From positions 86,862,001 through 86,926,000 of the forward strand of contig NC_092348.1 of assembly GCF_963676685.1 (NCBI RefSeq): a stretch of DNA of 64,000 bases, given 5' to 3'. Positions 9,201 to 64,000 of this stretch are shown here, piece after piece. The position numbers and the translations under genes were made by a program. Below the pieces are notes generated by a model, which saw only the letters and a program-made list of their open reading frames with translations, searched no databases and was not told the origin of the DNA. Source of the stretch: Mytilus edulis. Lineage: Eukaryota. Every line of letters starts with the position of its first letter. Within the stretch, counting starts at the first letter, position 1.

Positions 9201-12200
9201 ATAAACCAAAATGAAGCTACTCATTGCACTTATTTAATGTTGGGGTGACAACATCTTTTCTCATGTCAGTGTATGTGGTGACAAATAGGCAATAATGTTA
9301 GTGTATGTGGTGACAAATATGCAGTAATGTCAATGTATGTGGTGACAAATAGGAAAATTCAAATAGGCAAATTTGACAATGTGTGTGGTGAAAAATATGC
9401 AATAATGTTAGTGTATGTGGTGACAAATAGGCAATAATGTCAATGTGATGAATGGTGACAATATCTGCAATTATCTCAATGTGTGTGGTGACAACAAGTC
9501 AATAATGTCCATGTATGTGGTGACAAATAGGCAATTATGTAAATGTTTGTGGTGACAATATCTGCAATTATGTTAATGTATGTGGTGACAATAAGGCAAT
9601 TATGTCAAAGGGTGTGTGGTGACAAATAGGCAATTATGTTAGTGTGTGTGGTGACAAATAAGCAATTATATCAATGAGTGTGTTGACAATATCTGCAATT
9701 ATGTCAATGTGTGTGGTGACAAATAGGCAATTATGTCAATGTGTGTGTAGTAGCAAATAGGCAATTATGTCAATCGGTGTGTGGTGACAAATAGGCAATT
9801 ATGTCAATGTGTGTGTGGTGACAAAAAGGCAATTATGTCAATATGTGTGTGGTGACAAATAGGCAATTAGGTCAATATGTGTGGTGACAATATCTGCAAT
9901 TATGTTAATGTGTGTGGTGACAAATAGACAATTATGTCAATGTCTGTGTGGTGACAAATAGCCAATTATGTCAATGTTTGTGTGGTGACAAATAGGCAAT
10001 TATGTCAATGTGTGTGGTTACAAATAGGCAATTATGTCAATGTGTGTGGTGACAAATAGCCAATTATTCTAATGTGTGTGGTGACAATATCTGCAATTAT
10101 GTAAATGTGTGTGATGACAAATAGGCAATTATGTCAATGTCTGTGTGGTGACAAATAGGCAATTATTTCAATGTGTGTGTAGTGGCAAATATGCAATTAT
10201 GTCAATGTGTGAATGGTGACAAATATGCAATTATGTCAATCAGTGTGTTGACATAATAGGTACTTATGTCAATGTGTGTGATGGCAGCATAGACAATAAT
10301 GTCAAAGTGTGTGGTGACTTAATATGCAATTATGTCAATGCAAGTGGTGACACATCTGCACTTATGTAAATGTTTATGGTGACAACATAGGCACTTGTGT
10401 CAGGATTGTGGTGAGAACATCTGCACTTATGTCAATGTTTGTGGTGACAATATCTGTACTTATGTCAGGGTGTGTGGTGGCAACATAGGCACTTTTGTCA
10501 GTGTTTGTGGTGACAATATCAGCACTTATGTCATTGTGTGTGGTGACAACATCTGTACTAACGTCAATGTGTGTGGTGACAATATATGTACTTATGTCAA
10601 TTTGTGTGGTGACAATATCTTCACTTATGTCAATGTGTGTGGTGACAACATCTGTACTAATGTCAATATATGCGGTGACAACATCTGTACTAATGTCAAT
10701 GTATGTGGTGACAATATATGTACTTATGTCAATGTGTGTGGTGACAATATCTTCACTTATGTCAATGTGTGTGGTGACAATATCTGTACTAATATCAATG
10801 TGTGTGGTGACAATATATGTACTTGTGTCAATGTGGGTGGTGACAAAATCTGCAATTATGTCAATGTGTGTGGTGACAACATCTGTACTAATGTCAATGT
10901 GTGTAGTGACAACATCTGCACTTATGTCAATGTGTGTGGTGACAACATCTGTACTAATGTTAATGTGTGTGGTGACAACATCTATACTAATGTCAATTAG
11001 TGTGGCGACAACATCTGTACTAATGTCAATGTGTGTGGTGACAACATCTGTACTAATGTCAATGTATGTGGTGACAATATATGTACTTATGTCAATGTGT
11101 GTGGTGACAATATCTTCACTTATGTCAATGTTTGTGGTGACAATATCTGTACTTATGTCAGGGTGTGTGGTGGCAACATAGGCACTTTTGTCAGTGTTTG
11201 TGGTGACAATATCAGCACTTATGTCATTGTGTGTGGTGACAACATCTGTACTAACGTCAATGTGTGTGGTGACAATATATGTACTTATGTCAATGTGTGT
11301 GGTGACAATATCTTCACTTATGTCAATGTGTGTGGTGACAACATCTGAACTAATGTCAATGTGTGTGGTGACAACATCTGTACTAATGTCAATGTATGTG
11401 GTGACAATATATGTAATTATGTCAATGTGTGTGGTGACAATATCTTCACTTATGTCAATGTGTGTGGTGACAACATCTGTACTAATGTCAATGTGTGTGG
11501 TGACAATATATGTACTTATGTCAATGTGGGTGGTGACAACATCTGCAATTATGTCAATGTGTGTGGTGACAACATCTGTACTAATGTCAATGTGTGTAGT
11601 GACAAAATCTGCACTTATGTCAATGTGTGTGGTGACAACATCTGTACTAATGTTAATGTGTGTGGTGACAAGATCTATACTAATGTCAATTAGTGTGGCG
11701 ACAACATCTGTACTAATGTCAATGTGTGTGTCGACAACATCTGTACTTATGTCAATGTGTGTGGTAACAACATCTGTACTAATGTCAATGTGTGTAGTGA
11801 CAACATCTGCATTTATGTCAATGTGTGTGGTGACAACATCTGCACTTATGTCAATGTTTGTGGTGACAATATCTTCACTTATGTCAATGTGTGTGGTGAC
11901 AACATCTGTACTAATGTCAATGTGTGTAGTGACAATATCTGCATTTATGTCAATGTGTGTGGTGACAACATCTGCACTTATGTCAATGTTTGTGGTGACA
12001 ATATCTTCACTTATGTCAATGTGTGTGGTGACAACATCTGTACTAATGTCAATGTGTGTGGTGACAACATCTGTACTAATGTCAATGTGTGTGGTGACAA
12101 CATCTGTACTTCAATGTGTGTGGTGACAACATCTGTACTTCAATGTGTGTGGTGACAACATCTGTACTAATGTCAATATGTGTAGTGACAACATCTGCAT

Positions 12201-15200
12201 TTATGTCAATGTGTGTGGTGACAACATCTGCACTTATGTCAATGTTTGTGGTGACAAGATAGGCACTTATGTCAGGGTTTGTGGTGACAATATCTGCAAT
12301 TATGTCAGAATTTGTGGTGACAATATCTGTAATTATGTAAATATGTGTGGTGACAACATAGGCACTTATGTCAATGCTTGTGGTAACAATATCAACACTA
12401 CTCTCAATGTATATGTTGACAACATAGGCAGTTATGTCAATATATTTGACAACATCTGCATTTGTGTTGTTTGAGTTCATTCTAACATAAGTGCTTGTGA
12501 TGACAACACTTGTACTCATGTCAACATCTAGACAGCATTAATGTCAATGTTTGAGGTGACAACATATGTACTTATGTCAAGATATGTGCCAGGTGACAAT
12601 AATTGCCATTGTGTTGGTTGAGGTTATCTGTTTTCCCAGAAACTTCAATAACACCCAAATTTTATAATGATTGGTGCATGCAATCAAACACTACTGAAAT
12701 ATTAATAATGGCAGAAAGAAAACAGAAAGTTAAAAGATTGTTTCTGAAATAGCACTGCATTAAATCATATCTTATTCTTACCTCATAATCCTTGAACAAT
12801 TGCTTTAGAAAGAAAACCCAGCCTCCACCAAAAAATAAAACCTAAAGAAAAAACACATAATATTCAAAACATAAGTTCAACATAAATGTATGCAACTGTA
12901 TAATATTCTTCATTTAAGTAACCCTTACCATGTGGGGATTGTAAGTAAATGACTCCCTCTGATTGCAGGTCCAGGTCAATAACCAGACTAAGCCAAAAAT
13001 CAGGCATTTCAAATGATTTGTTTTTACATTCTCGAATTTTTGGTTGAAATAACCTCCTTAAGACTGTCATACCCAGATCAGTGTCATTCAGATCTAAACA
13101 ATATTGATGGTAAACCATTACATGAGACTACTGAGTTAAAATACATCTATAGGCAAACTTTGGTATTTAAGAGGACACGATAAAGAATGAAAAATCAAAA
13201 TTGATATTCTTGCACCAGATGACTAACTTAGGAGCAGCAATTTTAAAATGTCTCTTTGACATATAGACCCTTGTCACATCTCCTTTATTGCATAAAATGC
13301 ATGTATGATAATGACAATATTACCATAATCTTTATCGAATAAAATTACTTTAAAGAATATTTGTTGGACAACACACTAAAGGTCTTTCAATGCTATGAGT
13401 ATGAAGAGCATTTTGTAATAGAATTCTTTCTTGTGATTCTTACCACATCTTCTAATTTACATATTTATATATACAATGTATCTTAATTGGCCTTTTATTT
13501 TTTTTATTCGAGCCTCACTAATGTGTCTTTAATAAGATCTTGAAAATAAAATGAGCATTTGTGGTTAAAAAAAATTAAGTCAGGTATCTACATATCTGAT
13601 GAGTTTATTGGTCAGTGGTCGGTACCTCAAATGACTGAAGAACACTGTTATTATCAGAATAACACTTGTAGTGAATGAATAACACTTGAAATCTAAAAAT
13701 AGCACATATTAGTGACTTTAAAACGTTGATTTTTAAATAATAGTATATTAATTACCAGGCACAATATATACTCAAGACAAACAAATATATTTCACAGCAC
13801 AGGATAAACACTTGACTATACCAATGACAGTCACATATAAAATGTAGAGTTAATGTTAATGAGCAAATATAGCGTCAAGCCATTAAAAATAATAAATATA
13901 ATCATCCAAACAGATTGAATAAACATATGAGCTAGCCGCAGTATAAACAAGCACATCTTATAAATAAGTACATAGAATACAATAAAATTCATAACTAACA
14001 CAGTTGTATGTGGCGGGTGGGAGGGTAAATAATTTCAATGATAAATTTCAAATGTACCGCGAATCCCAAAACAAAGAAATATATAAGAGCGTCCTGTATC
14101 CAGGTAACAAAGTAACCAATCAAAATAAGGAATACTCGGAACAATTTCTTCCGAGTAAATGTAAACAGTGATTCACGTGGTAATTATCCATTTTTATAAA
14201 ATCAAAAATTACACATAAAGGTTTTTATAACTCAGAAATTATATATAAAAAGCAGGTAAGTTCATAAAGATCGTTATAAATATAGTGTTTACTCCAACAT
14301 GGCGACCAAGGATACCGCATTTATTCAATGCCACATGGTCGCCATGTTGGATGTACAAAAATGTACACACTTATTACACTATATTTATAATGATCTTTAA
14401 AAACTTACCTACTTGCTGTAAATCATTTTTAAGTCAATGTTTAAAAGTCACCAATGTGTGCTCATATTAAATTTGAAGTGTTATTCAGTCATTACAAGTG
14501 TGATTCAGATAAGAACGGTGTTATTCGGTCATTCATGTTACCCATCAGTGGTTGTCATCTTTAAAGTCTATTCAATTACACCTTATCGGCCTTTTCAGCT
14601 ACTGTTAGCTTAAAATTGGTTAAATCTTACTCTAATTCCTCAAAATATCCCTTTGCATCGGAACTAAACACATTTAATTTTTTAAAACAGTTATTGGCAT
14701 GACACGGGTTATGTTCTTCTCATATATTTTATGATAGTATGATACTGAACCCCTAACGGGAGGGATTGTGCCTGATATTCATATGATGAAGACATAATCT
14801 TTCAATCAGTTTAATTGAGGTCTGGAGCTGGCATGGCAGTTAACTGCTAGTAGTCTGTTGTTATTTATGTATTTTTGTCATTTTATTTATTTTCTTTTGT
14901 TACATCTTTTGACATCGGACTCAGACTTCTCTTGAACTGAATTTTAATGTGCGTATTGTTATGCATTTACTTTTCTTCATTGGCTAGAGGTATAGGGGGA
15001 GGGTTGAGATCTCATAAACATGTTTAACCCCGTCGCAATTTTGCGCCTGTCCCAAGTCAGGAGCCTCTGGCCTTTGTTAGTCTTGTATGATTTTTAATTT
15101 TAGTTCCTTGTGTATAATTCGGAGTTTAGTATGACGTCCATTATCACTGTACTAGTATATATATTTTAGGGGCCAGCTGAAGACACCTACGGATGTTGGA

Positions 15201-49953: not shown

Positions 49954-52094
49954 TTTGCCTGTTTTTCTTAAATTTTTAACAATAGGCCAACTATGTTTGT
50001 TAAATGGAAGAATTGTGAGCTGTTCATGACTGCCTGGCATGGTTCATCTGACCTTGGCCTCATTTTCATGTTTCATTGGTCAATGTTTAATTTTCTTGGT
50101 AAATGTTAAGTTTATCTGACAGTTGTAATAAAGCTTTATATTTAGGACTATCAACATACTATAAATGATTAGTAAAGAAGGCGAGACATTTCAGCGTGTG
50201 CAGTCTTGTGGTCCGATTCGTCGGATAACAATTCTTCCCCCTTATTTGTATCAACGATAGTTTCCTGTTTATTTGGTGTGCAAAATGTGTTCCCCCTTTT
50301 AAGTTGTCGATTTAGTTTCTTTTTGCGATTTTATTCCTTTCTTCTTACCAGTTTTATTCTAAAATAGATAGTGTATGAGTTATCTATGTGTACAAACAGA
50401 CCAGTGACAATTTTAGATACAATGTAGTTAATATTTGATTTAGTTTAGAATTCCATGCTGGAGGCAACACATGCAATTTCGCATTTTTTCTTTTGCAGTT
50501 TTGAAATCTCTTAGGTTTTTGTTAAGGTTTTTGGCGACGGAATTCATTACCTAAAATAATAATTTCAGGAAATATTATGCCAAATTTGTCAGAACAAGTA
50601 TTCTGTTGACTTTTGAACTAATGAAAAATATGTTTTCATTTTATATGTAGGAGGGTCATAGTTATTCGTTGACGGTGAACGTCTGTGTTAATTTTTACAG
50701 TATTGGGTTTTTTGGGTTGTTTTTTTATTCATTTTTATCTGGGACTATTATACTGTAGTATAATTATATAATAGTCCCAGTTTTTATATTGAAAAATGTC
50801 TATTCCCGTGATATATTATTTTCAACAGTTGCAGTTTAGACAAAACCAGCCGGCAGAGTATACCTTTTATAGTGCGGCATTATATAGAAAACCGTAAAAA
50901 AGGAAAATAACACAAATACCGAACTCCGAGTTGAATTCAAAACGGAAAATAACTAAATCGAATGGCAAACACACTAAACGAATGGATAACAGTTGTTATA
51001 TCCCTGACTAGGTACAAAAATAGGGATACAGCAGTCAACATTGTTATAATCTCAATCATTATAAAAACAAACAAATATGTCAACAAATAAAACCAAAAAG
51101 GCATATAGACAAAGAGCATTAGGAAAAACGAAAGACAAAAAAAACCAATAATTTATCATAAAGCATTAAAACACAATGACGGGATGAATAAGTACCGCGC
51201 CATATCAAATGGACACCACAATATAATCCAATTAACAGTTAAAGCAAGAATTTATACAGATAAATAGCAGAACACAATATCACGTTATTAAGATGATAAA
51301 CAATGTCAGTGCCTAGCATCTATACTTCACGGACATCGTGCATGAATTTGAAGTTGATATGGGAAACTATCAACAAGGTCTTTGTATCTTCCAATTAACG
51401 TTTTTAGAAAACAGGACTCCAAAGGGAAGTAAGATGCACCACAGCTTATACTAAAAAAAATATAAACTTTAAAAAAATACAATGTAAAATTTTCATGTTA
51501 ACACAGCTTCTCATTTAACTTAAATTTTAAAGGTATTTTGTCATTTTAAATGAATTTTAATTAAAACAGCTTTGATGTTGAATTACATTTTAAAGTTTTA
51601 TGTCATTATTCATGTTCCTTAAAACAAATATGAAGTATTATTAAGAGAAGTGAAAACAACACTTTAGAAATCTATGCATCGGAAGGTATTCAGAAATAAC
51701 ACAAAAAGAATTAAATGTCGGTGTCGCATTTTACACCGCGCAGATAGTTCTTACACTTGGTTTTAGAAAAATCAAATACCTGTATAAAGATAAAGATATG
51801 TGGTATGATTGTCATTGAGACAACTATCAACCAAAAATTAAAAGTAGTTAACAATTGTAGGCAACCGTTCGGCTTTTAACATTAATAAAAACCAAAACGT
51901 AAAGTCGGCTAAAAAAGCCCCGACATGAAAAACTATGAAATAATTCAATTGAGAAAACCAAAAAAATACGAAAAACGTACAGGACAGAAGAAAACCAACA
52001 ACAACCACTAGATTGCACATACTCATACATAATGTAAAAGGAGGGGTAAACATGTTTGTGAGCGGTCAAGTCCTTATGTTTAAACCATTTTTAA

Positions 52095-52779
52095 AGGGGC
52101 ACTAGCTACGAGATATATAAAAAAATCTAAAGTTTGATTTTTTTCTGTTCAATCAAAAATGAAAGTGAAATAGTGAAATAACAATTCGCTTTTTGCAGCC
52201 AAAAAGGTTCAATTTTGTCAAATTACGCTAAGAAACATTGGTAATTAGCTATTCACTTGCAAGTGAATGAGTCGACCTCTTTAACTCCGTATTCATGTGA
52301 ACTTCAATTTAACCCCTAACTAGAAATTGACAACGCATGCCTTGTACGTGTACTGGTTATTTAAAGAAAAAGAATGTCAACAATGAAAGTGAAACTACGG
52401 TAAATCATTTGATTACTAATTCGATGCACATAAAATCATTCTTATCCGGTTAAAACAATGAGAAACATCTATTTTTAATCTATAAAATAAAATCAAACAG
52501 ACCTATAAAAATCCCAATTGCACGTGTTGGTTTAATCTATTCATATCTTTATTTATGTTTACATCGCTTATATGGTCATCTGAGGTCAAATCGATAGTTA
52601 ATTAGATGGCGTCTGGACTAAAATACACACAAAACTAACCTATATATTATCTACCCCATGCTCTGTAAACTGTTTGTTTTAGACTTTTGATAGTTTGGAT
52701 AAATGTTTTACATTGTTATAAATCAAATATGAGAATTTGAGTCAAATCGGTGACCATGAATTTGACAGCTAGTGCCCCT
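52095..52779. mobile_element. Non-autonomous Kolobok-like DNA transposon
   Basis: Perfect 13-bp TIR aggggcactagct / agctagtgcccct, TTAA on both sides, and an empty TTAA site in duplicate copy 2 (~54526). Confidence 0.85.
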
Positions 52780-53249
52780 TTAATAGTAAACTTGTTTGAG
52801 AAAGTTTGAATTGAATACTGTTGACTAAAATCCGATTTTTGTAATCAACTGAATACAATGCAATTAGATTCGTGAAAAGATGTATGAATTAAGGCGATTG
52901 ATTTTTTTCTAAATCGACTAAGGTAGCAAATAGAAATCAATGGAATCTCATCAACTCCAAAAGGAGCTAGAAAGCATGCGTCGACAGAGTAGCCTATTCC
53001 TGCTATGCATGCATGCATCACTCGTCTTAGGAATTCACACTCATCCAAAATGTTGAAATCCGGGAATTTGAAACAATCGGTACAATTGCAGATCAGACGA
53101 CTATGCTATGTATCTAAAGATCTAAGCACAACAAAAACATGTCGCTAGTGAAAACGCGCGTCTGGTAAATCAAATCATAAGCCTGGTACCTTTGATGACT
53201 AATTATAAAACCATGTGAATAAACACTGCGCAGAAAATAACACGTAAAG

Positions 53250-53752
53250 GATCGAGTAAGTTCGGAAAGGGTCATATTTGGCCCCGATTATAAATTTCAA
53301 TATAACAAGATGAAAAATATTTTAAGTTGACTTTAAGACATGTAAGAAAGTTAAAACTATTTTTGCCAAAGTTTTTACATCCAAAATAGGTGAAGATAAA
53401 TCGGCCGGATTTCAACCAAATTTAGGACCAGGAAACATAGAGAGCAGGCGTCGACTTACTAAATATTCAAGTTAGACATTTAAAATGTCTTTACAAATAT
53501 TATTTCAAAAGATCTTTGTTGTCGACGTATACGCTCTCTGTTTCCTGTCCATAGTCGATGAAAATCTACCCATTAAGTACTATTTGTGACGGCATAAATA
53601 AAACGCAGGAACGTTAATTTCCAACAAAAGCGCTTATTTCCTATCTAGTCACTGTATTAGCTATGATTCATTTGGATTTTGGTCAATATGTCCTAATTTG
53701 AAATTTAAGCGAAAAAGGGGACCATTTTAGGACCTTACCAAACCTACTCCTC
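53250..53752. mobile_element. Older MITE with degenerate ~36-bp TIRs (second copy at ~55000-55521)
   Basis: gagtaagttcggaaagggtcatatttggcccc / ggggaccattttaggaccttaccaaacctactc. Confidence 0.6.
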
Positions 53753-55810
53753 TAAAGCGTCTGAACCACTTTTATGGAAATACTTCACCACGAACGCTAA
53801 AAATCCAAGAATTTGAAAGCTTGGAAATCAGTACACAAGAAAACTATTAGAAGAAACATAAACTTTGCGGTTTATTCACTTACCTTGATCGATTTTTTTG
53901 TATGTCGGTGCTTTTTAGGTGCTTTACATATCAATCTTATGATCTTGTTCCCTGCACATTGTGGTTTTGACGACATTGTTATCAAAATGATAGAAATATG
54001 AAAAAATAATTTAAATGACACCAAGCATGAAAAAATGCACGATTACATAACAAAACGTGTTGAATTACATTTTAAAGTTTTATGTCATTATTCATGTTTC
54101 TTAAAAAATATATGAAGTATTATTAAGAGAATTGAAAACAACACTATATAAATCTATGCATCGGAAACGATATTCAGATATAGCACAAAATGAATTAAAT
54201 ACCTGTCTATAAAGATAAAGATATGTGGTATGATTGATATTGAGACAACTATCAACCAAAGTTTAAAAGCAGTTAACAATTATAGGCAACCGTTCGGCTT
54301 TTTTACGTTAATAAAAAACCAAAACGTAAAGTCGGCTAAAAAAGCCCCGACATGAAAAATTATGAAACAATTCAATTGAGAAAACCAAAAAAATACGAAA
54401 AACGTACAGGACAGAAGAAAACCAACAACAACCACTAGATTGCACATACTCATACATAATGTAAAAGGGGGGGGGGGGGGGTAAACATGTTTGTGAGCGG
54501 TCAAGTCCTTAGGTTAAAACCATTTTTAATAGTAAACTTGTTTCAGAAAGTATTGAATTGAATAATGTTGACTAAAATCCGATTTTTTTTAATCAACTGA
54601 ATACAATGCAATTAGATTCGTGAAAAGATGTATGAATTAAGGCGATTGATTTTTTTCCTAAATCGACTATGGTAGCAAATAGAAATCAATGGAATCTCAT
54701 CAACTCCAAAAGGAGCTAGAAAGCATGCGTCGACAGAGTAGCCTATTCCTGCTATGCATGTATGCATCACTCGTCTTAGGAAATCACACTCATCCAAAAT
54801 GTTGAAATCCGGGAATTTGAAACAATCGGTACAATTACAGATCAGACGACTATGCTATGTATCTAAAGATCTAAGCACAACAAAAACATGTCGCTAGTGA
54901 AAACGCGCGTCTGGTAAATCAAATCATAAGCCTGGTACCTTTGATAACTAATTATAAAACCATGTGAATAAACACTGCGCAGAAAATAACACATAAAGGA
55001 TCGAGTAAGTTCGGAAAGGGTCATATTTGGCCCCGATTATAAATTTCAATGTAACAAGATGAAAAATATTTTAAGTTGACTTTAAGACATGTAAGAAAGT
55101 TAAAACTATTTTTGCCAAAGTTTTATTCTAAATCGTTGATTTTTACATCCAAAATAGGTGAAGATAAATCGGCCGGATTTCAACCAAATTTAGGACCAGG
55201 AAACATAGAGAGCAGGCGTCGACAAACTAAATATTCAAGTTAGACATTTAAAATGTCTTTACAAATATTATTTCAAAAGATCTTTGTTGTTGACGTATAC
55301 GCTCCCTGTTTCCTGTCCAAAAGTCGATGAAAATCTACCCATTAAGTACTATTAGTGACGGCATAAATAAAACGCAGGAACGTTAACTTCCAACAAAAGC
55401 CCTTATTTCCTATCTAGTCACTGTATTAGCTATGATTCATTAGTATTTTGGTCAATAAGTCCTGATTTGAAATTTAAGCAAAAAAGGGGGCCATTTTAGG
55501 ACCTTACCAAACCTACTCCTCTAAAGCGTCTGAACCACTTTTATGGAAATACTTCACCACGAACGCTCAAAATCCAAGAATTTGAAAGCTTGGAAATCAG
55601 TACACAAGAAAACTATGAGAAGAAACATAATCTTTGCGGTTTATTCCCTTATCTTGACCGATTTTTTTTTATGTCGGTGCTTTTTAGGTGCTTTACATAT
55701 CAATCTTATGATCTTGTTTCCTGCACATTGTGGTTTTAACGACATTGTTATCAAAATGATAGAAATATGAAAAATTAATTTAAATGACATCAAGCATGAA
55801 AATATGGCAC

Positions 55811-55920
55811 GATTACATAACAAAACGCTATATATTCAGCATATGATGTTACTATTTAAACAGCAAACACTCCGATGAAGATTGTCACTACATTCAACAG
55901 AATATTGTCAGCAACTTAAG
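55811..55920 (+). promoter_or_regulatory. Putative promoter and non-coding exon 1 of the cysteine-rich peptide gene
   Basis: C/EBP-like ATTACATAAC at ~55812, TATTTAAA at 55853, and a perfect donor AAG|GTAAGT at 55920. Confidence 0.55.
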
Positions 55921-56247
55921 GTAAGTCGTATATAATGCCTTACGTTTTAGTAGCTCCTAACTTTAAGTGTGTCTGGCTGCGTGTGACTTATTATCGTTTC
56001 AATATTCCTGTTTATAAAATATTTTCGTTCTATACTGCATTTAAAATGTAGGTTTTCGGATGATAAAGCCGATTTTTTCTTATTTTAATTATAGAAACTG
56101 CATTTTCATTTATACGCAAACTTTTCCTTACTATGTACTAATCTAACATTAGACAATGGACATGACCAATCGCTTACGAATTTGGTGCTGTGTTATGGTT
56201 CGATAAATAAGCTCATCATAGATACCAGGATTGAAATTTTATATTTA

Positions 56248-56289
56248 CGCCAGACGCGCGTTTCGTCTACAAAAGAAACATCAGTGACG
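56248..56289 (-). ncRNA. Degenerate minimal type I hammerhead ribozyme (retrozyme/Penelope-type repeat)
   Basis: Minus strand reads cgtca-CTGATG(tt)-tcttttgtagac-GAAAC-gcgc-GTC-tggcg. Core A9 is mutated. Confidence 0.7.
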
Positions 56290-56812
56290 CTCGAATCAAA
56301 AAATGTTAAAAGGCCAAATGAAGACGAAGTTGAAGAGCATTGAGGACCAACAATTTCTGAAAGTTATGCCAAATAAAAGTCAACTGTTAATCCGATATTG
56401 CGTGATCCCCTTTCATTTAATATAACTATATTATATATTCTATATGATTATCAAGACAGGTGTAACTAGTGAAATAGTCGTGACTCTTCCGGAGGACATG
56501 CCCCAATCGTTTTTGGTGGGATTCGTTTTTTTTCAGTTTAATTTCTATGTAGCGTTTTATGAGCTTTAGTTGACGTTCAGTCATCTTCTGTTTTTATCAT
56601 GTCGTTGTGATTTTTCTCGACTTGTGGGTTTCGGATGTTCATTTTGTATCTTCTACATCTTAATATTTTCGATTTTCGATACTATCCTGTTGTCACTATG
56701 TTTGGCGTTGATATGATTCTGATTTATTACACAGAAAAGTTTTTCTGATTGCAGTTTGTCCAACGATTATCGGTATTTAACTTTGTTATTTACCTCTTTT
56801 AGAAATAAGAAG

Positions 56813-56861
56813 ATGAAATTGGTAATTGTGGTTACAACTTTACTCCTCATCATGGCATTCG
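56813..56861 (+). CDS. Peptide gene: signal-peptide exon
   Basis: ttttag|aaataagaagATG MKLVIVVTTLLLIMAF G|gtaagc. Confidence 0.85.
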
Positions 56862-59800
56862 GTAAGCATCTCATTAATGATAATGTTTATAAAACAGGAA
56901 ATCACATGATACATTATTATTTGAATGGGATCGTTACTAGTTAGAAGCATACACAACAATTTTGTACTAACAAACACACAATTTCAAACACAAAAAAAAC
57001 CCATTTTTTTTCTTTTTAGTTTTATTAAAAATAAATGTCACAAATGATGAAAAATCAATGACAATTACTAAGAACAGTTATTGAATAGATAATTAAAAAA
57101 ACTAAAGCTTGGTTGAGCCATTCCAATTTAACAGGAAATTATCCACGATTGTCCAACTATTTATCTGAGATTTTCAAATGACAAAACACGGTATTAAAAA
57201 TATAATTCCCCCACCACAACATACAGTGTCATTATTTTCTGTGAGAAACTGCAGAAATCATTCGGATAAAAATCAAAGTGCAAAATGGCATTATGCGGTG
57301 AATCTTTTGAAAATGTTTCATTGAAAAAAAGACAACAGCAGATATAACACTGGAATAAAAGGACAATTTGTTGAATAGCAAATATATTGTATTAATTAAT
57401 ATACTGATATAAAATTTACCTGACGAAATGGTAAAAATTTACATTCGTAGTGGTGAACAACACATGGAGCTTATTCTAAAGATAATCCCAAACAGTTAAG
57501 TGTTTATTACAAACTTAATGGCTCCGATCAACATCAGTTTTCAAAAGTCAATAAAACAACATACAAATGTCAGAAGTTGTGTAATATGTGTAATATAAGG
57601 TAGAAGCAAATTTGACCCTCAAGTCATATACTTTTTCATCATCGACATGGTCTGAAATATTATCATAAATATTTTTTGAAAATAATCAACTTGTCTTTAT
57701 TTTCCAACCAGGCATACAGATATCTAGCCAAGCGTCGTGTACGGCTATGTGTACTAAATTGAACCACGACCGTTGTTATGGCTGTTGTCATGCCAAAGAC
57801 TGCTTCAACGGTGGAAATTGCGATAGCTTGACAAAAAGATGCGTTTGTAATGGATGCATGGGTAAGTTAATAATTTTTTTACATTTTAATGTTGTGTTTC
57901 TGTCCTGTCGTAGTTATCCTCTTATATTTGATGCGTTTCCCTCAGTTTTAGTTTATAACCCGGATTTTTTTTTCTCAATCGATTTATGATTTCGAACAGC
58001 GGTATACTACTGTTGCCTTTATTTACATTACTATTACAGAAGAACACTTTGACACACGAAAGTTAAAAAGTTGTCGTAGCTACACTTTAAGATCGACTAA
58101 CAACAAGAAGGCATTTTGCCGTGCAGATACAACTACAGATAAAACGCCAAAAATATACCGTTCTTTAAAAAACGTTCTTTTTAGACAACATTTTCCCGCA
58201 GTTTTCCGAAACGTGGGAAATAAATTTATATTCACATAAGAGCTTATAGTCGATATCACTTCTGGCGGACTGTTACTCCCCTTGGATTACATTAGCTACA
58301 GTTCTGATAATATTTTTAAGTTCTCAGTTGAAATAGTTAGAAACCATCGAAAAACAAAGTTCAATCTCACCTAAGGCAAAGTTTACTTATATAAATTGGC
58401 TACTAGTATTTGTTTTGAGTTTTTTAAAGTCATATTTCTCGTAAGGTTTCTATCAAGTTATACGTCCCTTACTCTCAAATGTTAAAGTTTGAGCTTTACC
58501 AATAAATGTTAATCTCTGAAACGCGTTGAAAGCACCAAATGTATAAAGTCTTATTTTGCTTTCAATTGGTAGATATCTATGTGGTTGGACTGATACTTTC
58601 CGAAGTTATCATTGCATAAGTCAGTGCTTCGGTACTGACAGTTACATTTTATTCCCCACTGTATGCGACGAGGCATAAAGTGTAACCCTTCACCGTCCGT
58701 GTTTTATTTTTTGTTTGTTTGGAGCTTGAACAGGAGCATTTTTCTTTTAATTTTCCAAAAATTGGCATTTGATGAATCATTGAAAAAATACGGTTCCAAC
58801 TTCCCTTGACAAATGTGCCCTTAAAGGAATTTGGCTATTCTATCTAGGTTGGTAATGGCATATAGCGCTTAACGTTTCCTTGTTCTTTATAATTCTAGCG
58901 TTCTAATGTTTTGGTTTAAACTTTCAAGAAAATATAGTTACATGTATTTTTTGCACTTTTATCTCTTATAATTGATTTTTCCTTCGGTTTTGGTTTGTTA
59001 CCCGGATCGTTTTTTCTCAACCGATTTAAGACTTGCGATCAGCGGTATACTACTGTTGCATTTATTTAACAACAATTATTCGTTTGACCATCTTGGTCAA
59101 AATTTCAAAATTTTCCATTACCTGGAGCAGACGATTCGTACACCCCTCAATTTGAGAATCGACTAGGCTCTCCATCAGTGTATTTATATTTAATCATTAA
59201 TTATCCGAAGGGATGTTTATATTAAAAACATGCTTTAAATAATGATGGAAAGTGTTTTTTTTAAATATAAGTCGCAATATGTTTTCTCTCCATTTCTGAA
59301 AACATTTTCAAAATTTTCCTATAACCTATGCAGACGATTTGCACACGTAACACCCCTCAATTTGAGAATCGACTAAGCTACCCATCATGCTATTTATTAT
59401 TAATGATTAATTCCCCATCGGGATAATTGTATTAAAAACATGCTTTTAGCCATGAATTAGACCAGTCTGTATCATGGTACATTATGAGACAATCGTTCCC
59501 AACCAAGGAGAAAGTGGGCTTTTTTTTGGGGGGGGGTCCATTCATTTGTTCCATTAAAATGTATTGATCGTCCAAAGTAGGTTTCCAACCCCCGAAACCC
59601 CCTTCCCCCAAAGATGCCACTGGGTGGACACGATTCTGAAATCGAAGCCGGGGAATGAATGGGAGTTAGGTTTCCAACCCCCGAAACCCCCTTCCCCCAA
59701 AGATACCACTGAGGAATGAGTGGGAGTTATGTTTGGGGGAATTGAGAGTGAGGCTGGAACCAGGTGACAAGGGTAGTAAAAAAGGAATAATTTATGCCTA

Positions 59801-60362
59801 ACCAAAAAAAAGGTAAGGGGGTCCCCGGAAGACAAGTGGGAATCATCCCATGTTCACCCCTTAATTACAGGAGTCAGTATATTAAGTCACTTTATTAAAA
59901 AAAAATGATTACCTGCAATTACTTTAGTTTCATAGCAAAATATGTGAATTTTAATGTTCCTTGTTACATATACAAATAGAAAAAAAATTGGCACGAATAT
60001 TCGATTTTTTTATTTTAAGTTTGAATAGATTGACATAGGAAGATCGTGATTGGTCAATTTTATCATTGCATTTTGTTCTATTTTGAATATAAAAAGCATG
60101 GTTTTGAAGATTACTTTCAACATTACTGATGTTGTCAAAATTTGATATTCATTGACCGTTTGGTGTTATTATCATTAAAAGGGGGTGTGTTTTAAAACAA
60201 GAATTTTATCACCAGACAGTATTTTCAAATATGATAGATACAAACTCAAAAAGAAAATGAACTATTACATTTATTCCATGTCCTCCTCTATTTGATAACT
60301 AATTGATATATTATCATTTCTTTTCAGGAATGAAAGCAGGAGCTGCAGGAAAACCTATGTAA
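56813..60362 (+). CDS. Secreted 10-cysteine peptide, CS-alpha/beta (myticin/defensin-like) antimicrobial peptide candidate, 77 aa
   Basis: Exons 56813-56861, 57712-57861 and 60328-60362, GT-AG, both introns phase 1. Product: MKLVIVVTTLLLIMAFGIQISSQASCTAMCTKLNHDRCYGCCHAKDCFNGGNCDSLTKRCVCNGCMGMKAGAAGKPM. AATAAA at 60399. Confidence 0.85.
57712..57861 (+). CDS. Peptide gene: mature cysteine-array exon
   Basis: ccag|...10 Cys...G|gtaagt. Confidence 0.9.
59127..59447. repeat. Local duplication (~200-bp period) in peptide gene intron 3
   Basis: gcagacgatt...cacccctcaatttgagaatcgacta...attaaaaacatgcttt occurs twice. Confidence 0.75.
59578..59710. repeat. Direct repeat of a C-rich ~40-mer (taggtttccaacccccgaaacccccttcccccaaagat)
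   Basis: Two near-identical copies ~89 bp apart. Confidence 0.8.
60328..60362 (+). CDS. Peptide gene: C-terminal extension exon
   Basis: tttcttttcag|GA MKAGAAGKPM TAA, with a polyA signal 36 nt later. Confidence 0.7.
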
Positions 60363-62184
60363 AAATTATAATCAATATCGTTAGTTTAAAATCGGGTGAA
60401 TAAACATATCCGTTTAAGGACTTTGGTGTTTTGCTATCATTGTTTCTCCATTTGATTTGAAGTTTTTTTTACATCATGTACAAGTACGTTAAATTTGTAT
60501 GATATTGTATTACATTAGGTTTACGAGACCTTTTGACGATCCACTTTTAACAAAACTGAGGTTTAGAAGCTAATCAACACAGGAATTAAAAAAAAAAATG
60601 TCTGAAAATTATAAAATATTCAGATCAAGAGGCGTTTTGTTAACTAAGTGTAACGACATTGTGGTTATCTCCACAAACAAAATGGGGCGAAAGATACCAA
60701 AAAAACTCATTTAAAAACTAAAAGCGACATGGCGAAAAAAAAACGAACATCAACAAACAAATCTACAAAACACTACATAGAAAACTGCATACAGGACAAC
60801 AACAACAAAAAATAGTGGGGGTTACCACAGGTGCTCCGAACGGTCATCCCTAACTGCTGTAGTTGTGACACTCGTTATGGGACTTTTTGAAAATAAAAAT
60901 GTTACACAAAAACTGTTTTACCTATGTTGGACTGTCGCTTACTGCATAAATTGAAATTCTGGTTATCGTTGAATGATTTCCTTTACTGGAATGACTTTGA
61001 TACAAATTTCCCAACATTCTATATAAAATAAGATTTTCAACTGTTTTTATATCACTTTATCAGTAAGAAATATCAAAGAAATTTCTTAACAAACATCATA
61101 AAAGAGGGACGAAATAAAGATACCAGAGGGGCTTTCAAACTCATAGATTAAAAATAATTCATAAGTTACAACGCCAGGGCTAAAAATAAACAGACAAACA
61201 AACAAAATATAGTACAGAAGACACAACATAGAAAACTAAAGAATAAGCAACACGAACCCCACCAAAAACTGGGGGTGATCTTAGGTACTCCGGAAGCAAA
61301 TCCTGCTCCACATGTAACACCAATGTTTTATTATATTAGTTTAAGATGATTGCATTAAATAATGCTTTGCAAAGTATTTGGTGTAAAATAACGAACAGTT
61401 GGCTAACGGCTGAAAAAAATAACAGAATTTAAATCATAAGATTTTTGTATTGCATGACCATCTTGAACACATGCAAAGATTTAAACAAATAATGATATCG
61501 CTTCTGCTTTTTTCTAGTGGATTATGTGACGAAAGGAGAAAAGTATTGAAGGTGTATGTTATTTATCAATTGTCTGTAATGAAGTTTTAAAAAAGAGAGA
61601 AACTAAAAAGATATTGGACACGAATTTTGATGAAACGGTGTATATGTGTAAGATGCTAAGTTCATCACACGCGATTATGGGTGTGTTGAAAATAAGCTAA
61701 ATATGCTTTTCACATTTTGTAGGAACCAAATGCAAAATAAACACGTTTAACTATAAACCCCAAAATAGAAAAAGAAACCAATGATTTGATAGGAAATAAA
61801 AGTAAATCTAAAAAAAGAGACGAATGCTTTAAAAGTGAAAATCAAACTAATACTAGTGAAAAAAGACCTGAGCAAACAAGAACCCCACACAAAATATTTG
61901 AGAGGGGGTATATCCTGTTCCACAAGTAAGTAGGAATTAGTTAAATTCTGATTATTATATGACTATAAATGCTTCATTATCTCATTGGCTAAATGGAGAC
62001 AACAGTTGTATATTGCTGTTCAATAGTCATAAATCGATTGAGCAAATACAAATACAAATCCGGGTTACATAGTAGAACCGAAAGAAACACATCAACTATA
62101 ACAGGAACAATGAACTGCAACAAAAATGCCAACATATATAGAAACGGACTTTTATTTGGCTTTTTAAACTTTTGTTTATTCGAG

Positions 62185-62227: not shown

Positions 62228-64000
62228 CACATACAATATTCCAATTCTTGTATCAACGATGAGTTTTTTTTTATAACAACTGCCATATCCTGACTTGGTA
62301 CAGGACATTTTAAGAAAGAAAAAAAATGTTGGGTTGAACCTGGTTTTGTGATTTTTTATGTCTATTAATTCCTCTCGCTTATATGGCAATGTTGAAAATA
62401 CCACTAAAATGATAATTACAGGACAGCAATACAGAGCAAACAAACACAAAAACGCTCACCCCAGAAAAATGCATAAATAAATAATAGAATAGTACATTAC
62501 AACCGCAGAATTACAACGAGAGCACAAAAGCAAATATAATCCTCTTATGAAACATTATATCTACCGCGGCTGAAATCATAGGAGATTGTTATAAGATGTG
62601 CATCATTACAAATAAATAGATGTAACATATCTTTATTTGCCACTATACGTCAGACTGCATGCGATTGACTGACCGTTTACCGGAAGCCATGCTAGAATAT
62701 TATATGTATATATCATCTATAGGTTGTGCTATTCTTAAACAGCAATCTGAATCTGAAAGAAGCTTTCACGTTCACGACTCAATCATTACTAATCATAGCA
62801 GTTAAATATGAACATTTAAAATTTAAAATTATGAGATTTAAACGACAGCAAAGTACTGTTCCTTTCATTAATCGACAAACGCGAAAAACAGATGTTATGA
62901 TTAATTTATATGATGTATGTAACGTCGTTTGACATACTAACTCATTTAGATAAATATAACAAACAAATTTTACATGTAACTTTGATGATTGCATATTCTA
63001 ATTGACCTGCTGACGACACCCCTTCCTTGTGGTTAAAGGGATATGAATACCAATGAGGCGTCTGTTGGCTGTGTGGGATGCATAAATTATTAACAGCCGT
63101 GTCCAGTCGGAATAGGGACGTTTAGTTATATACCTCGGGTTGTAATGATCGTGCCACCCATCTGTGCTTTACAGAACACTCGGCACAACTCTTTGCGAAT
63201 TGACTTTTTTCATGTCAAGTTTCTAATTCTTTAAAAGTAACACATGATCTACCTGTTTATAGCATTTTTAATATTCATCAGCATATGGTCTACCCGAGGC
63301 TCTGTTGTATCCTTTATATCAAGTTCGATGAGATAGATGCGTCAATATAGTAACCAACTTTTGAATTATTTAGTGGGGGACATGATCTTTATAGTGGAAA
63401 GTGAAGTTAAAGGATACTACTAACGTCTTTTCTATCTACCTTAGAAGTTCCTGCATGACGTCAGCCACATATAAAGAAAGAAACACGTCGTTTTTTTTTA
63501 AATAGTCCAAAATTCATCACATGTATATTAACCATGTATTACTATTGTTGCCTTTATTTATGAATCAAGAAATTAAGCATCTTCATTTTTTGTTTAATTG
63601 GAGTGATTTTCAACAAAGTCCGATTTATCCCTCCATAAGAAAAGCTATTTGTATCTACGTTGTCCATTCTTGTTTATGAAACAAGCCAACTATTTTTGTC
63701 TTTTAGTTCAAATATGGAAAACTTGTGTAAAGTGTCGAAAAGTCAAATGAATCAAGAGTCTTATATTTTATTTACTCTAAACGACCTTTGAAATTTTTAA
63801 GTATCTACATCTGATTCATAATACCTCTAGAATATGTAGTTAACAATAACTTCAAATCCCCGCTGTGATTGATGATATAATGAGAAAAATTTCGTGGAGT
63901 ACTTAGAAAACCCAGCAAAATAATTGTTCTTTGGTTGAAATTCCAAATGAATGGGGAACAAGCACAGGTATACAAAGAAGTTTTAAACTTGAAGTCGTCA

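What the first reader, a model, noticed from the sequence alone, without database searches (positions are those of the whole stretch)
55853..60404. Hidden 4-exon gene for a secreted 10-cysteine CS-alpha/beta-like peptide: candidate new bivalve defence-peptide family
Seen in sequence: three coding exons splice in phase into a signal peptide, a Cys array C-x3-C-x7-C-x2-CC-x4-C-x5-C-x6-C-x-C-x2-C and a short tail, with a non-coding first exon and a polyA signal. Known: Mytilus myticins, mytilins and defensins have 8 Cys with a CxxxC/CxC core ending C-x-C-x2-C. Myticin and mytilin genes use the same layout of UTR, signal, mature and tail exons. Inference: Cys 2,3,5-10 form a myticin/defensin-like core, and Cys 1 and 4 add a fifth disulfide pinning the N-terminus to the helix. 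The tail is short and basic, unlike the longer acidic myticin/mytilin pro-regions. I do not recognise this spacing from any named family.
Basis: partly seen in the sequence, partly recalled or inferred. Interest (0 to 1): 0.85.

Follow-up and report, generated by a model that had tools for sequence, protein, structure and literature searches.

The report
Unannotated mussel 10-cysteine defensin-like peptide gene
A real, spliced and well-expressed mussel (Mytilus) gene encodes a small secreted 10-cysteine peptide that most likely has the defensin/scorpion-toxin fold; public annotations hold it only inside two wrongly fused gene models, so it adds an unnamed lineage to the mussel's large defence-peptide repertoire.

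Summary
RNA contigs from three studies carry all three GT..AG junctions at exactly the predicted bases, and one contig ends in a poly(A) tail 16 nt after AATAAA. The pieces read as a 16-codon signal exon, a 49-codon exon with the array C-x3-C-x7-C-x2-CC-x4-C-x5-C-x6-C-x-C-x2-C, and a 10-codon basic tail.

The gene is single-copy in this 1.37-Gb Mytilus genome. It lies far from the myticin, mytilin and defensin clusters.

An exhaustive protein search found only two mis-fused public models (M. edulis 'GPR158', M. coruscus 'unnamed') and one intron read-through ORF. The M. coruscus copy keeps all 10 cysteines.

No Pfam family matches. It is not a pseudomyticin, pseudomytilin or CRP-I.

The CS-alpha/beta fold is supported but not proven:
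- An 8-Cys mollusc defensin/myticin array is embedded (0.04% of random placements fit).
- The ten nearest structural neighbours of the ESM Atlas model of the M. coruscus copy are all defensin or scorpion-toxin families.
- My own AlphaFold runs were low-confidence.

The signal exon (16 codons plus G, phase 1) is identical in layout to the myticin and mytilin genes here.

Defence function is inferred only. The myticofensin paper (2022) could not be read, so prior naming cannot be excluded.

The parts
55829..55836 (+). TATA-like box about 35-40 nt upstream of the first transcribed base seen in RNA
   Evidence: Read directly in the sequence. The RNA contig begins at about 55870.
55870..55920 (+). 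Exon 1, non-coding 5' UTR.
   Evidence: X2 contig joint 55920->56803 with GT..AG ends and 49 letters on the exon-1 side. An X4 contig carries the last 10 nt of exon 1.
56803..56861 (+). Exon 2: 10 nt of UTR, ATG at 56813, 16 codons of signal peptide plus the first base (G) of a split Gly codon. A phase-1 intron follows.
   Evidence: Translation. The joint 56861->57712 appears in contigs of three runs. Myticin and mytilin genes of this genome have the same 16-codon + G layout.
57712..57861 (+). Exon 3: the end of the signal peptide (likely cleavage after SSQA), then the whole 10-Cys domain. A phase-1 intron follows.
   Evidence: Translation. Contigs at depth 255-803 with 0 differing letters. 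The Cys array fits the embedded 8-Cys CS-alpha/beta array. The M. coruscus ortholog is 84% identical and keeps all Cys.
60328..60420 (+). Exon 4: a 10-codon tail (two Lys, no acidic residue), TAA at 60360-62, 3' UTR, AATAAA at 60399-60404, and a poly(A) site at about 60420.
   Evidence: Translation. The joint 57861->60328 appears in three runs. A 23-A loose end lies behind 60420 in X2.
56113..56454 (.). High-copy repeat inside intron 1. It is not part of the mRNA.
   Evidence: Word depths are in the thousands, with many variant letters and loose ends in all runs, including the other species' RNA.
57862..58164 (.). High-copy repeat at the start of intron 3. It is not part of the mRNA. ORF callers read exon 3 through into it (P0003).
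   Evidence: depths. (P0003 maps to 57747-58236). Inverted match to 62050-62106.

Best explanation
This is a genuine, single-copy, highly transcribed Mytilus gene with four exons: 5' UTR; signal peptide; Cys-rich domain; short basic tail.

Product. It makes a 77-aa precursor. After signal cleavage (probably after SSQA) this leaves a secreted peptide of about 53 aa with 10 cysteines and a net charge of about +4.

Fold (supported). The Cys-rich domain most likely folds as a cysteine-stabilised alpha/beta (defensin / scorpion-toxin-like) unit.

Pairing (inferred). The helix C-x3-C (Cys3, Cys5) would bond the strand C-x-C (Cys8, Cys9). Cys2-Cys7 and Cys6-Cys10 would complete the 8-Cys mollusc defensin/myticin pattern. 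Cys1-Cys4 would add a fifth bridge tying the N-terminus to the helix, as I recall for chlorotoxin-type toxins that have the same C-x2-CC motif.

Origin (inferred). The gene shares the mussel peptide-gene framework of a 16-codon signal exon followed by a phase-1 intron. It probably arose within that framework in the genus Mytilus and has diverged beyond sequence recognition.

Function (inferred). It is most likely a secreted host-defence effector, either antimicrobial or, like some myticins, immunomodulatory.

Status of each step. The transcript, splicing, polyadenylation and conservation in M. edulis and M. coruscus are shown. The fold is supported by prediction. The pairing, processing and function are inferred.
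For: Transcript:
- All three junctions and the poly(A) tail are seen in RNA contigs of three studies at high depth.

Copy number and location:
- Exon 3 gives a single hit in the 1.37-Gb genome. The signal exon and promoter are also unique.
- The known clusters lie elsewhere: myticin at C10:38.69 Mb, mytilin at C1:88.2 Mb, mytilin-like at C10:45.8 Mb, defensins at C4:8.4 Mb and C7:5.18 Mb. This gene is at C5:86.92 Mb.

Conservation:
- M. edulis CAG2228857.1 is 100% identical over exon 3.
- M. coruscus CAC5391782.1 is 84% identical. All 10 Cys, the GG and a 20-residue core are invariant, and the signal exon differs at 1 of 16 residues.

Fold:
- The embedded array C-x7-C-x3-C-x4-C-x5-C-x6-C-x-C-x2-C fits the mollusc 8-Cys type (Tarr 2016 reference array, PMC5116183). 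Only 0.04% of random Cys placements fit it.
- A GxC-x6-C motif (GNC...C) can be read in exon 3; from my own knowledge this matches the published gamma-core consensus GXC-x3-9-C.
- The ESM Atlas model of the ortholog's residues 25-66 has ten nearest clusters that are all gamma-thionin, Defensin_2, nematode ABF, drosomycin or scorpion toxin, with 31-40 residues aligned and TM 0.61-0.73 by query.
- The top ten feature neighbours of both orthologs are all CS-alpha/beta toxins or defensins.
- The only three PDB sequence hits are plant defensins. One is 1n4n (Petunia floral defensin-like protein 1), whose CVACC aligns with CYGCC. They are not significant (E 0.56-2.2).

Gene framework:
- A signal exon of exactly 16 codons + G, phase 1, is found in every myticin and mytilin signal exon recovered and in the C4 defensins.
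Against: - AlphaFold2 gave only low-confidence models, with pLDDT 52 and 51. These models have no structural match in the PDB.
- The Atlas model comes from a 341-aa chimeric protein whose mean pLDDT is 0.51. TM scores on about 40 residues are weak evidence.
- Feature scores (0.84) are below the tool's 0.9 line.
- No Pfam family matches, even at E 10. Profile comparison with myticins and mytilins is uninformative, but so is myticin against mytilin.
- The phase-1, 16-17-codon signal exon is also found in the knottin-type CRP-I genes (PMC4558851). It therefore marks a mussel peptide-gene framework, not CS-alpha/beta descent specifically.
- The Cys-rich core is only weakly cationic (about +2) and lacks the anionic pro-region of myticins and mytilins.
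- One RNA-seq run of the sister species showed no reads on the exons (X24).
- There are no tissue, induction or activity data.
Confidence: 0.68

Rival explanations
1. Same gene and same fold, but not an antimicrobial effector. It could be a signalling or cytokine-like peptide, an ion-channel-directed toxin-like peptide, or a structural or secretory component such as byssus, shell or gamete coat.
For: The core charge is low, about +2 in exon 3 and about +1 in M. coruscus. The nearest language-model neighbours are scorpion short toxins rather than defensins. Some myticins are proposed to act like cytokines (PMC10138031 introduction). CRP-I peptides with toxin-like arrays showed no antimicrobial activity (PMC4558851). 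The tissue of the expressing runs is unknown.
Against: Every characterised CS-alpha/beta peptide family of mussels is a host-defence family (PMC7168163, PMC7356231, PMC5116183). Myticins also have near-neutral pI (PMC7356231). High expression in three unrelated studies fits an effector peptide.
Confidence: 0.22
2. The peptide already has a name. It would be the ortholog of a member of one of the three myticofensin groups described from M. coruscus in 2022, or of another family published where I could not read it.
For: PMC10138031 cites Liu et al. [quoted passage not shown] An ortholog exists in M. coruscus. The paper is not held.
Against: The one myticofensin I could trace, via qPCR primers in PMC11898675, maps to an 8-Cys MGD-like gene at C7:5.18 Mb that matches Defensin_2. 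The present peptide does not match Defensin_2. No short precursor of this sequence exists among 1.84 billion representatives or in the 5.8-billion-cluster set. The shared 10-residue motif occurs in no searchable paper.
Confidence: 0.18
3. The Cys-rich domain folds differently, as an inhibitor-cystine-knot (C-C-CC-C-C) core with extra bridges, or as an EGF-like domain (the CFNGGNC stretch).
For: Cys2-Cys7 read C-x7-C-x2-CC-x4-C-x5-C, which is close to a knottin array. My AlphaFold models are unreliable.
Against: The array does not fit the published CRP-I consensus, although 7.8% of random placements do. There is no Pfam EGF, knottin, WAP or TIL hit. All ten structural neighbours of the ortholog's Atlas model are CS-alpha/beta, and none is knottin or EGF.
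Confidence: 0.08
4. The peptide exons are the N-terminus of a longer protein fused to the downstream leucine-rich-repeat gene, as in the public M. edulis model.
For: CAG2228857.1 (533 aa) joins the peptide to an exon at window 62747-62926. It uses a GT that overlaps the ATG-TAA at 60358.
Against: RNA contigs run through that GT to AATAAA and a poly(A) tail at 60420 at full depth. The model also starts in the untranscribed promoter. The M. coruscus model fuses the same exons to a transposon endonuclease instead.
Confidence: 0.03

Closest known systems
Myticins (Mytilus; Pfam PF10690 Myticin-prepro)
   Same: Four-exon gene with a UTR-only first exon. The signal exon is exactly 16 codons + G with a phase-1 intron. 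The Cys-rich domain is in exon 3. The embedded 8-Cys array ends C-x-C-x2-C. The core is near-neutral to weakly cationic.
   Different: There is no HMM match. This peptide has two extra Cys (10 against 8) and different loop lengths. Exon 3 ends one residue after the last Cys, and the next intron is phase 1, whereas in the myticin gene I examined (L002) it appears to be phase 2. The tail is a 10-residue basic stretch, not an anionic extension of about 36 residues. It is a singleton on C5, not in the C10 cluster.
Mussel defensins MGD / myticofensin-type (Pfam PF01097 Defensin_2)
   Same: The 8-Cys pattern C..C-x3-C..C..C..C-x-C-x2-C with a GG-x-C turn. There is a phase-1 intron inside the signal peptide.
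   Different: There is no Defensin_2 match. The traced myticofensin-like gene (C7:5.18 Mb) has 19 signal codons and stops right after the last Cys. This peptide adds Cys1 and Cys4 and a separate tail exon.
Chlorotoxin-like scorpion short toxins (Pfam PF05294 Toxin_5)
   Same: They are the nearest language-model neighbours (0.83-0.84). They share the C-x2-CC helix motif, in which, as I recall, the first Cys of the doublet bonds an N-terminal Cys. They share the CS-alpha/beta fold.
   Different: There is no HMM match. The toxins have 8 Cys, not 10, and lack the Cys6-Cys10 pair. They are arthropod venom peptides that, as I recall, act on channels. This is resemblance of design, not evidence of descent.
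Five-disulphide plant defensin PhD1 (PDB 1n4n)
   Same: As I recall, it also has 10 Cys on a CS-alpha/beta scaffold. Its CVACC aligns with CYGCC, its ..GHC.. with ..GNC.., and its RRCLC with KRCVC.
   Different: E = 0.68, which is not significant. The positions of the extra Cys differ. It is a plant protein, so any likeness is convergent.
MgCRP-I (mussel knottin-like peptides)
   Same: A Mytilus-restricted family of secreted Cys-rich peptides. Four exons, with the second encoding about the first 17 residues, followed by a phase-1 intron.
   Different: CRP-I has a conserved pro-region with a dibasic site in exon 3 and its C-C-CC-C-C array in exon 4. The present array does not fit the CRP-I consensus.

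Membership tests
CS-alpha/beta (scorpion toxin-like) superfamily | Cysteine-stabilised helix motif: C-x3-C in the helix paired with a later C-x-C in a strand (reference Cys 3, 4, 8, 9 of Tarr 2016) | tested here: met
   Cys3-YGC-Cys5 and Cys8-V-Cys9 are present in the right order and distance. The full 8-Cys array fits; chance fit is 0.04%.
CS-alpha/beta (scorpion toxin-like) superfamily | Third bridge partners (reference C2 and C6, the latter in a GxC turn) | tested here: met
   Cys2 lies 7 residues before the helix Cys, and Cys7 sits in GG-N-C. Both are conserved in M. coruscus.
CS-alpha/beta (scorpion toxin-like) superfamily | Three-dimensional fold: one helix packed on a 2-3-stranded antiparallel sheet | tested here: inconclusive
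   The ESM Atlas model of the ortholog has ten of ten nearest clusters in CS-alpha/beta families, TM 0.61-0.73. My AlphaFold2 models have pLDDT 51-52 and no PDB match.
CS-alpha/beta (scorpion toxin-like) superfamily | Disulphide connectivity C2-C6, C3-C8, C4-C9 (reference numbering) | not testable with these tools
   This needs disulphide mapping or a solved structure.
Myticin (PF10690) | Match to the Myticin-prepro profile | tested here: not met
   hmmscan of exon 3 gave no family at E up to 10. The own-genome scan with PF10690 lists 27 places, none in the window.
Myticin (PF10690) | 8-Cys array C-x4-C-x3-C-x4-C-x4-C-x8-C-x-C-x2-C and an anionic C-terminal extension | tested here: not met
   The peptide has 10 Cys and different loops. 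The tail MKAGAAGKPM is basic and 10 residues long.
Myticin / mytilin gene framework | Four exons, a UTR-only exon 1, and a signal exon of 16 codons + 1 base with a phase-1 intron | tested here: met
   The feature is also shared by CRP-I (PMC4558851), so it is not specific.
Mytilin / pseudomytilin | Array C-x3-C-x3-C-x4-C-x11-C-x-C-x-C-x2-C (PMC7168163) | tested here: not met
   The arrays of five mytilin-type genes of this genome differ from the window's array.
Pseudomyticin | Myticin-like sequence lacking Cys1 and Cys5, so 6 Cys (PMC7356231) | tested here: not met
   The peptide has 10 Cys and no myticin profile match.
Defensin_2 (PF01097; MGD, traced myticofensin) | Match to the Defensin_2 profile | tested here: not met
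   One search gave no hit. The own-genome scan lists 20 places, none in the window.
Myticofensin (Liu et al. 2022), all three groups | Sequence identity with a published member | not testable with these tools
   The paper is not held. Only one member was traceable by primers, and it is a different gene.
MgCRP-I | Conserved pre-pro region with a dibasic site, and the array C(x3-6)C(x1-7)CC(x3-4)C(x3-5)C in exon 4 | tested here: not met
   The array does not fit. There is no pro-region, and the Cys domain is in exon 3.
EGF-like domain | Match to an EGF profile, or an EGF-like structural neighbour | tested here: not met
   No Pfam hit. No EGF family appears among the structural or feature neighbours.

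The most novel reading that the evidence does not exclude
This is the founding member of a further, so far unnamed, Mytilus-restricted family of CS-alpha/beta host-defence peptides. It would be the first in mussels with five disulphides on a 41-residue core. The extra bridge would be built as in chlorotoxin-type scorpion toxins. The gene would descend from the common mussel defensin/myticin/mytilin gene framework but sit alone on another chromosome.
Probability: 0.4. Interest if true: 0.55.

Novelty: new variant of a known kind. Interest (0 to 1): 0.5.

Why it matters
Mussels resist infection unusually well, and their defence peptides are mined as antibiotic leads. Their CS-alpha/beta peptides (defensins, mytilins, myticins, myticofensins) are a model for fast gene-family evolution and for presence/absence variation.

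An abundantly expressed, conserved, single-copy peptide with a new five-disulphide array would add a compact and probably very stable scaffold to test.

The finding also shows that current genome annotations lose such genes by fusing them to neighbouring genes or transposons. Here the fusions are an M. edulis model named 'GPR158' and an M. coruscus model named 'Endonuclease/exonuclease/phosphatase domain-containing protein'.

The shared signal exon (16 codons, phase 1) across myticins, mytilins, defensins, CRP-I and this gene points to a common secretory cassette behind several mussel peptide families.

Tried and rejected
Searches and folds that gave nothing useful:
- The search for homologous proteins with exon 3 found no candidate.
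- Pfam found no family.
- AlphaFold2 on exon 3 alone, and on the 41-residue core with a 4-row alignment, gave pLDDT 52 and 51, which is not usable.
- hhalign of this peptide against myticin and mytilin alignments built from this genome gave no signal. Myticin against mytilin also gave none, so the method cannot judge these short peptides.
I therefore could not fetch the M. coruscus or M. edulis DNA, and could not compute dN/dS or see the M. coruscus tail exon.
- Literature searches found no paper holding the motif CYGCCHAKDC. They found no named mussel family with ten Cys of this size.

Limits on what was done:
- The RNA run of the other species (X24) had no reads on the exons. I treat this as uninformative, because the tissue is unknown and only 18% of the run was read.
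- The joined 77-aa precursor was never sent to any search or fold. No SignalP-type run, and no pI or mass calculation, was made on the spliced product. The charge was counted by eye, exon by exon.

Readings rejected: pseudomyticin, pseudomytilin, CRP-I, EGF-like domain, and the LRR-fusion protein.

Full report
WHAT IS THERE

- Exon 2 (56803-56861) starts coding at ATG 56813. It gives 16 codons, MKLVIVVTTLLLIMAF, plus one G before the donor GTAAGC.
- Exon 3 (57712-57861) follows an AG. It gives 49 whole codons: the end of a signal peptide (IQISSQA), then a domain with ten Cys spaced C-x3-C-x7-C-x2-CC-x4-C-x5-C-x6-C-x-C-x2-C, plus one G before GTAAGT.
- Exon 4 starts at 60328 and gives MKAGAAGKPM and TAA at 60360-62. 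AATAAA lies at 60399-60404.
- Both split codons read Gly, so the precursor has 77 residues.

Everything below was done exon by exon, by reference.

IS IT EXPRESSED AND SPLICED AS CLAIMED?

Yes. I laid contigs of three runs from three different studies of the same species on 55600-60700. I also laid raw RNA reads of a run labelled as another organism, apparently a sister species.
- All three contig runs carry the joints 56861->57712 and 57861->60328, with GT..AG ends. Word depths are 255-803, and exon 3 has no differing letter.
- One 376-nt contig (X2) also carries 55920->56803. This is the non-coding first exon, beginning at or before about 55870, roughly 35-40 nt after a TATA-like box at 55829-55836. 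The contig ends in 23 A's immediately after 60420, which is 16 nt past AATAAA.
- Unique intron sequence has depth about 1-10.
- Two intron stretches (56113-56454 and 57823-58164) have depths in the thousands with many variants. They are dispersed repeats, not part of this mRNA.
- The other species' RNA run (X24) had no reads on the exons. Its tissue is unknown and only 18% of it was read, so this says little.
- The runs are coded, so I cannot say which tissue expresses the gene.

COPY NUMBER AND NEIGHBOURHOOD

- The genome (1.37 Gb, window at C5:86.86-86.93 Mb) is a Mytilus. It holds myticin A/B/C-type genes at C10:38.69 Mb, mytilin B-type genes at C1:88.2 Mb, further mytilin-like genes at C10:45.8 Mb, six-Cys defensins at C4:8.4 Mb and an MGD-like defensin at C7:5.18 Mb.
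- Exon 3, the signal exon and the promoter/exon 1 each hit only themselves. The one exception is the 5' end of the promoter query, which belongs to a local tandem duplication.
- No other Cys-rich ORF of this kind is in the window.
- The gene is therefore a singleton, away from every known cluster.

RELATIVES ELSEWHERE

The word-indexed search found nothing. An exhaustive phmmer pass over 1.84 billion representatives found exactly three proteins.
- P0001 = CAG2228857.1, 'GPR158 [Mytilus edulis]', 533 aa. This model starts in the untranscribed promoter and runs through the three coding exons (100% identical in exon 3). It then uses a GT overlapping the ATG-TAA at 60358 to jump to an exon of the next gene (window 62747-62926) and continues into a leucine-rich-repeat protein.
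- P0002 = CAC5391782.1, unnamed, M. coruscus, 341 aa. Its first 66 residues are the ortholog of exons 2-3 (84% identical over exon 3, 1 change in 16 signal residues). It is fused to a transposon endonuclease.
- P0003 is an ORF call that reads exon 3 on into the intron.

The peptide is therefore conserved across the genus. All ten Cys, the GG and a 20-residue core are invariant. Even so, no database holds a correct short model of it. The RNA contigs, with their poly(A) tail at 60420, show that the fused models are annotation artefacts.

WHAT FOLD?

No Pfam family matches, even at E 10. Four lines of evidence point to the cysteine-stabilised alpha/beta fold.
1. If Cys1 and Cys4 are left out, the rest reads C-x7-C-x3-C-x4-C-x5-C-x6-C-x-C-x2-C. 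In Tarr's ten-Cys reference array this is the mollusc defensin/myticin type (reference C2-C6, C8-C10; PMC5116183). With generous loop ranges, only 0.04% of 200,000 random placements of ten Cys in 41 residues fit it. The knottin-type CRP-I consensus does not fit, although 7.8% of random placements do. The ranges were set after seeing the peptide, so the first figure is somewhat flattering.
2. The only three PDB sequences reached by phmmer are plant defensins. They are not significant (E 0.56-2.2), but they align CYGCC..F.GG.C....RC.C. One of them is 1n4n, Petunia floral defensin-like protein 1, which as I recall has five disulphides.
3. Language-model features of both orthologs have only CS-alpha/beta families among the ten best named clusters, led by chlorotoxin-like short scorpion toxins at 0.83-0.84. 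This is below the tool's 0.9 line, so it is a lead only.
4. The ESM Atlas holds a model of the M. coruscus protein. For residues 25-66, its ten nearest structure clusters are gamma-thionins, Defensin_2, nematode ABF, drosomycin-like, plant defensin-like and scorpion alpha-toxins, with 31-40 residues aligned and TM 0.61-0.73 by query.

Against this, my two AlphaFold2 runs were poor (pLDDT 52 and 51), although both place a hairpin on ..NCD.. and ..RCV... These models find nothing in the PDB. TM scores on 40 residues are also soft. I put the CS-alpha/beta fold at about 0.8.

LIKELY PAIRING (INFERENCE)

The pairing I infer is Cys3-Cys8 and Cys5-Cys9 (helix to strand), Cys2-Cys7, Cys6-Cys10 as in MGD-1 and the myticins, and Cys1-Cys4. 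As I recall, the last has a precedent in chlorotoxin-type toxins: the first Cys of the C-x2-CC doublet bonds an N-terminal Cys. It is consistent with everything seen but is untested.

GENE FRAMEWORK

- Every myticin, mytilin and mytilin-like gene of this genome for which I could find the signal exon has ATG + 16 codons + G, then GT, i.e. phase 1. This is exactly as here.
- The C4 defensins have the same layout. The C7 MGD-like gene has 19 codons + G.
- CRP-I genes are described with 'the first 17 amino acids' and a phase-1 intron as well (PMC4558851). The feature therefore marks a general mussel secretory-peptide framework rather than one family.
- Unlike myticins and mytilins, exon 3 here stops one residue after the last Cys, and the tail exon encodes ten basic or neutral residues instead of a long anionic pro-region. 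The next intron is phase 1, whereas in the myticin gene I examined (L002) it appears to be phase 2.

IS IT ALREADY NAMED?

- Pseudomyticins have six Cys (PMC7356231). Pseudomytilins have the canonical mytilin array (PMC7168163). CRP-I has C-C-CC-C-C in exon 4. None of these fits.
[quoted passage not shown] 2022). That paper is not held.
- qPCR primers for 'Mc myticofensin' in PMC11898675 let me trace one member. The reverse primer matches perfectly at C7:5179918-38. The forward primer spans the exon 2/3 junction of the same gene, which is an 8-Cys MGD-like defensin matching Defensin_2. That gene is different from the present one.
- I cannot check the other myticofensin groups. I keep about 0.18 for 'already named'.

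FUNCTION

Function is inferred only. The product is a secreted, disulphide-rich, mildly cationic peptide, with about +2 in the core and +2 in the tail. It is abundant as mRNA. It belongs structurally to a class whose mussel members are all host-defence peptides. It is most likely a defence effector, either antimicrobial or immunomodulatory. Its weak charge and toxin-like neighbours leave room for a non-antimicrobial role.

VERDICT

This is a new variant of a known kind: a five-disulphide, Mytilus-restricted, defensin-like peptide whose gene public annotations have mis-modelled.

Noticed in passing
window 51576-55827: There is a tandem duplication directly upstream of the gene. 52836-54057 matches 54584-55827 at 96-99%, and 51576-52094 matches 54058-54529 at 94-95%. 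The second copy ends about 2 nt before the gene's TATA-like box, so most of the proximal promoter exists twice but only one copy is followed by the gene. Both copies carry a roughly 80-aa ORF on the minus strand (52848-53105, 54615-54854).
   Followed up: partly
window 60357-60359 and 62747-62926: A GT overlapping the last sense codon and the stop (ATG-TAA) is used by the public M. edulis model CAG2228857.1 ('GPR158') to fuse the peptide to the next gene on the + strand. That gene is a leucine-rich-repeat protein, and its exon at 62747-62926 is 80% identical. RNA contigs do not support the fusion within the stretch laid.
   Followed up: partly
window 56113-56454 and 57823-58164 (and 62050-62106): Intronic high-copy repeats have RNA word depths in the thousands in both species' runs, with many variants and chimeric joints. 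The element at 57917-57973 has an inverted partner at 62050-62106 (79%). They look like abundant short transposable elements that are transcribed genome-wide.
   Followed up: no
window 10383-12471: A long minisatellite has a 33-nt unit that reads in one frame as repeats of [11 protein letters not shown]. It mimics a Cys-rich ORF but is a tandem repeat.
   Followed up: no
G000:C7:5179300-5179960 (L024: signal exon 915-972, mature exon about 1415-1541, +): This is the ortholog of the M. coruscus 'myticofensin' assayed in PMC11898675. It is an 8-Cys MGD-like defensin (C-x6-C-x3-C-x4-C-x4-C-x7-C-x-C-x2-C). Its signal exon has 19 codons and a phase-1 intron, and the stop codon follows the last Cys directly.
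   Followed up: partly
G000 loci L002-L011, L015-L020: The signal exon of myticin, mytilin, mytilin-like and six-Cys defensin genes is always ATG + 16 codons + G followed by GT. This invariance across families that share no detectable sequence similarity suggests a common secretory exon cassette.
   Followed up: partly
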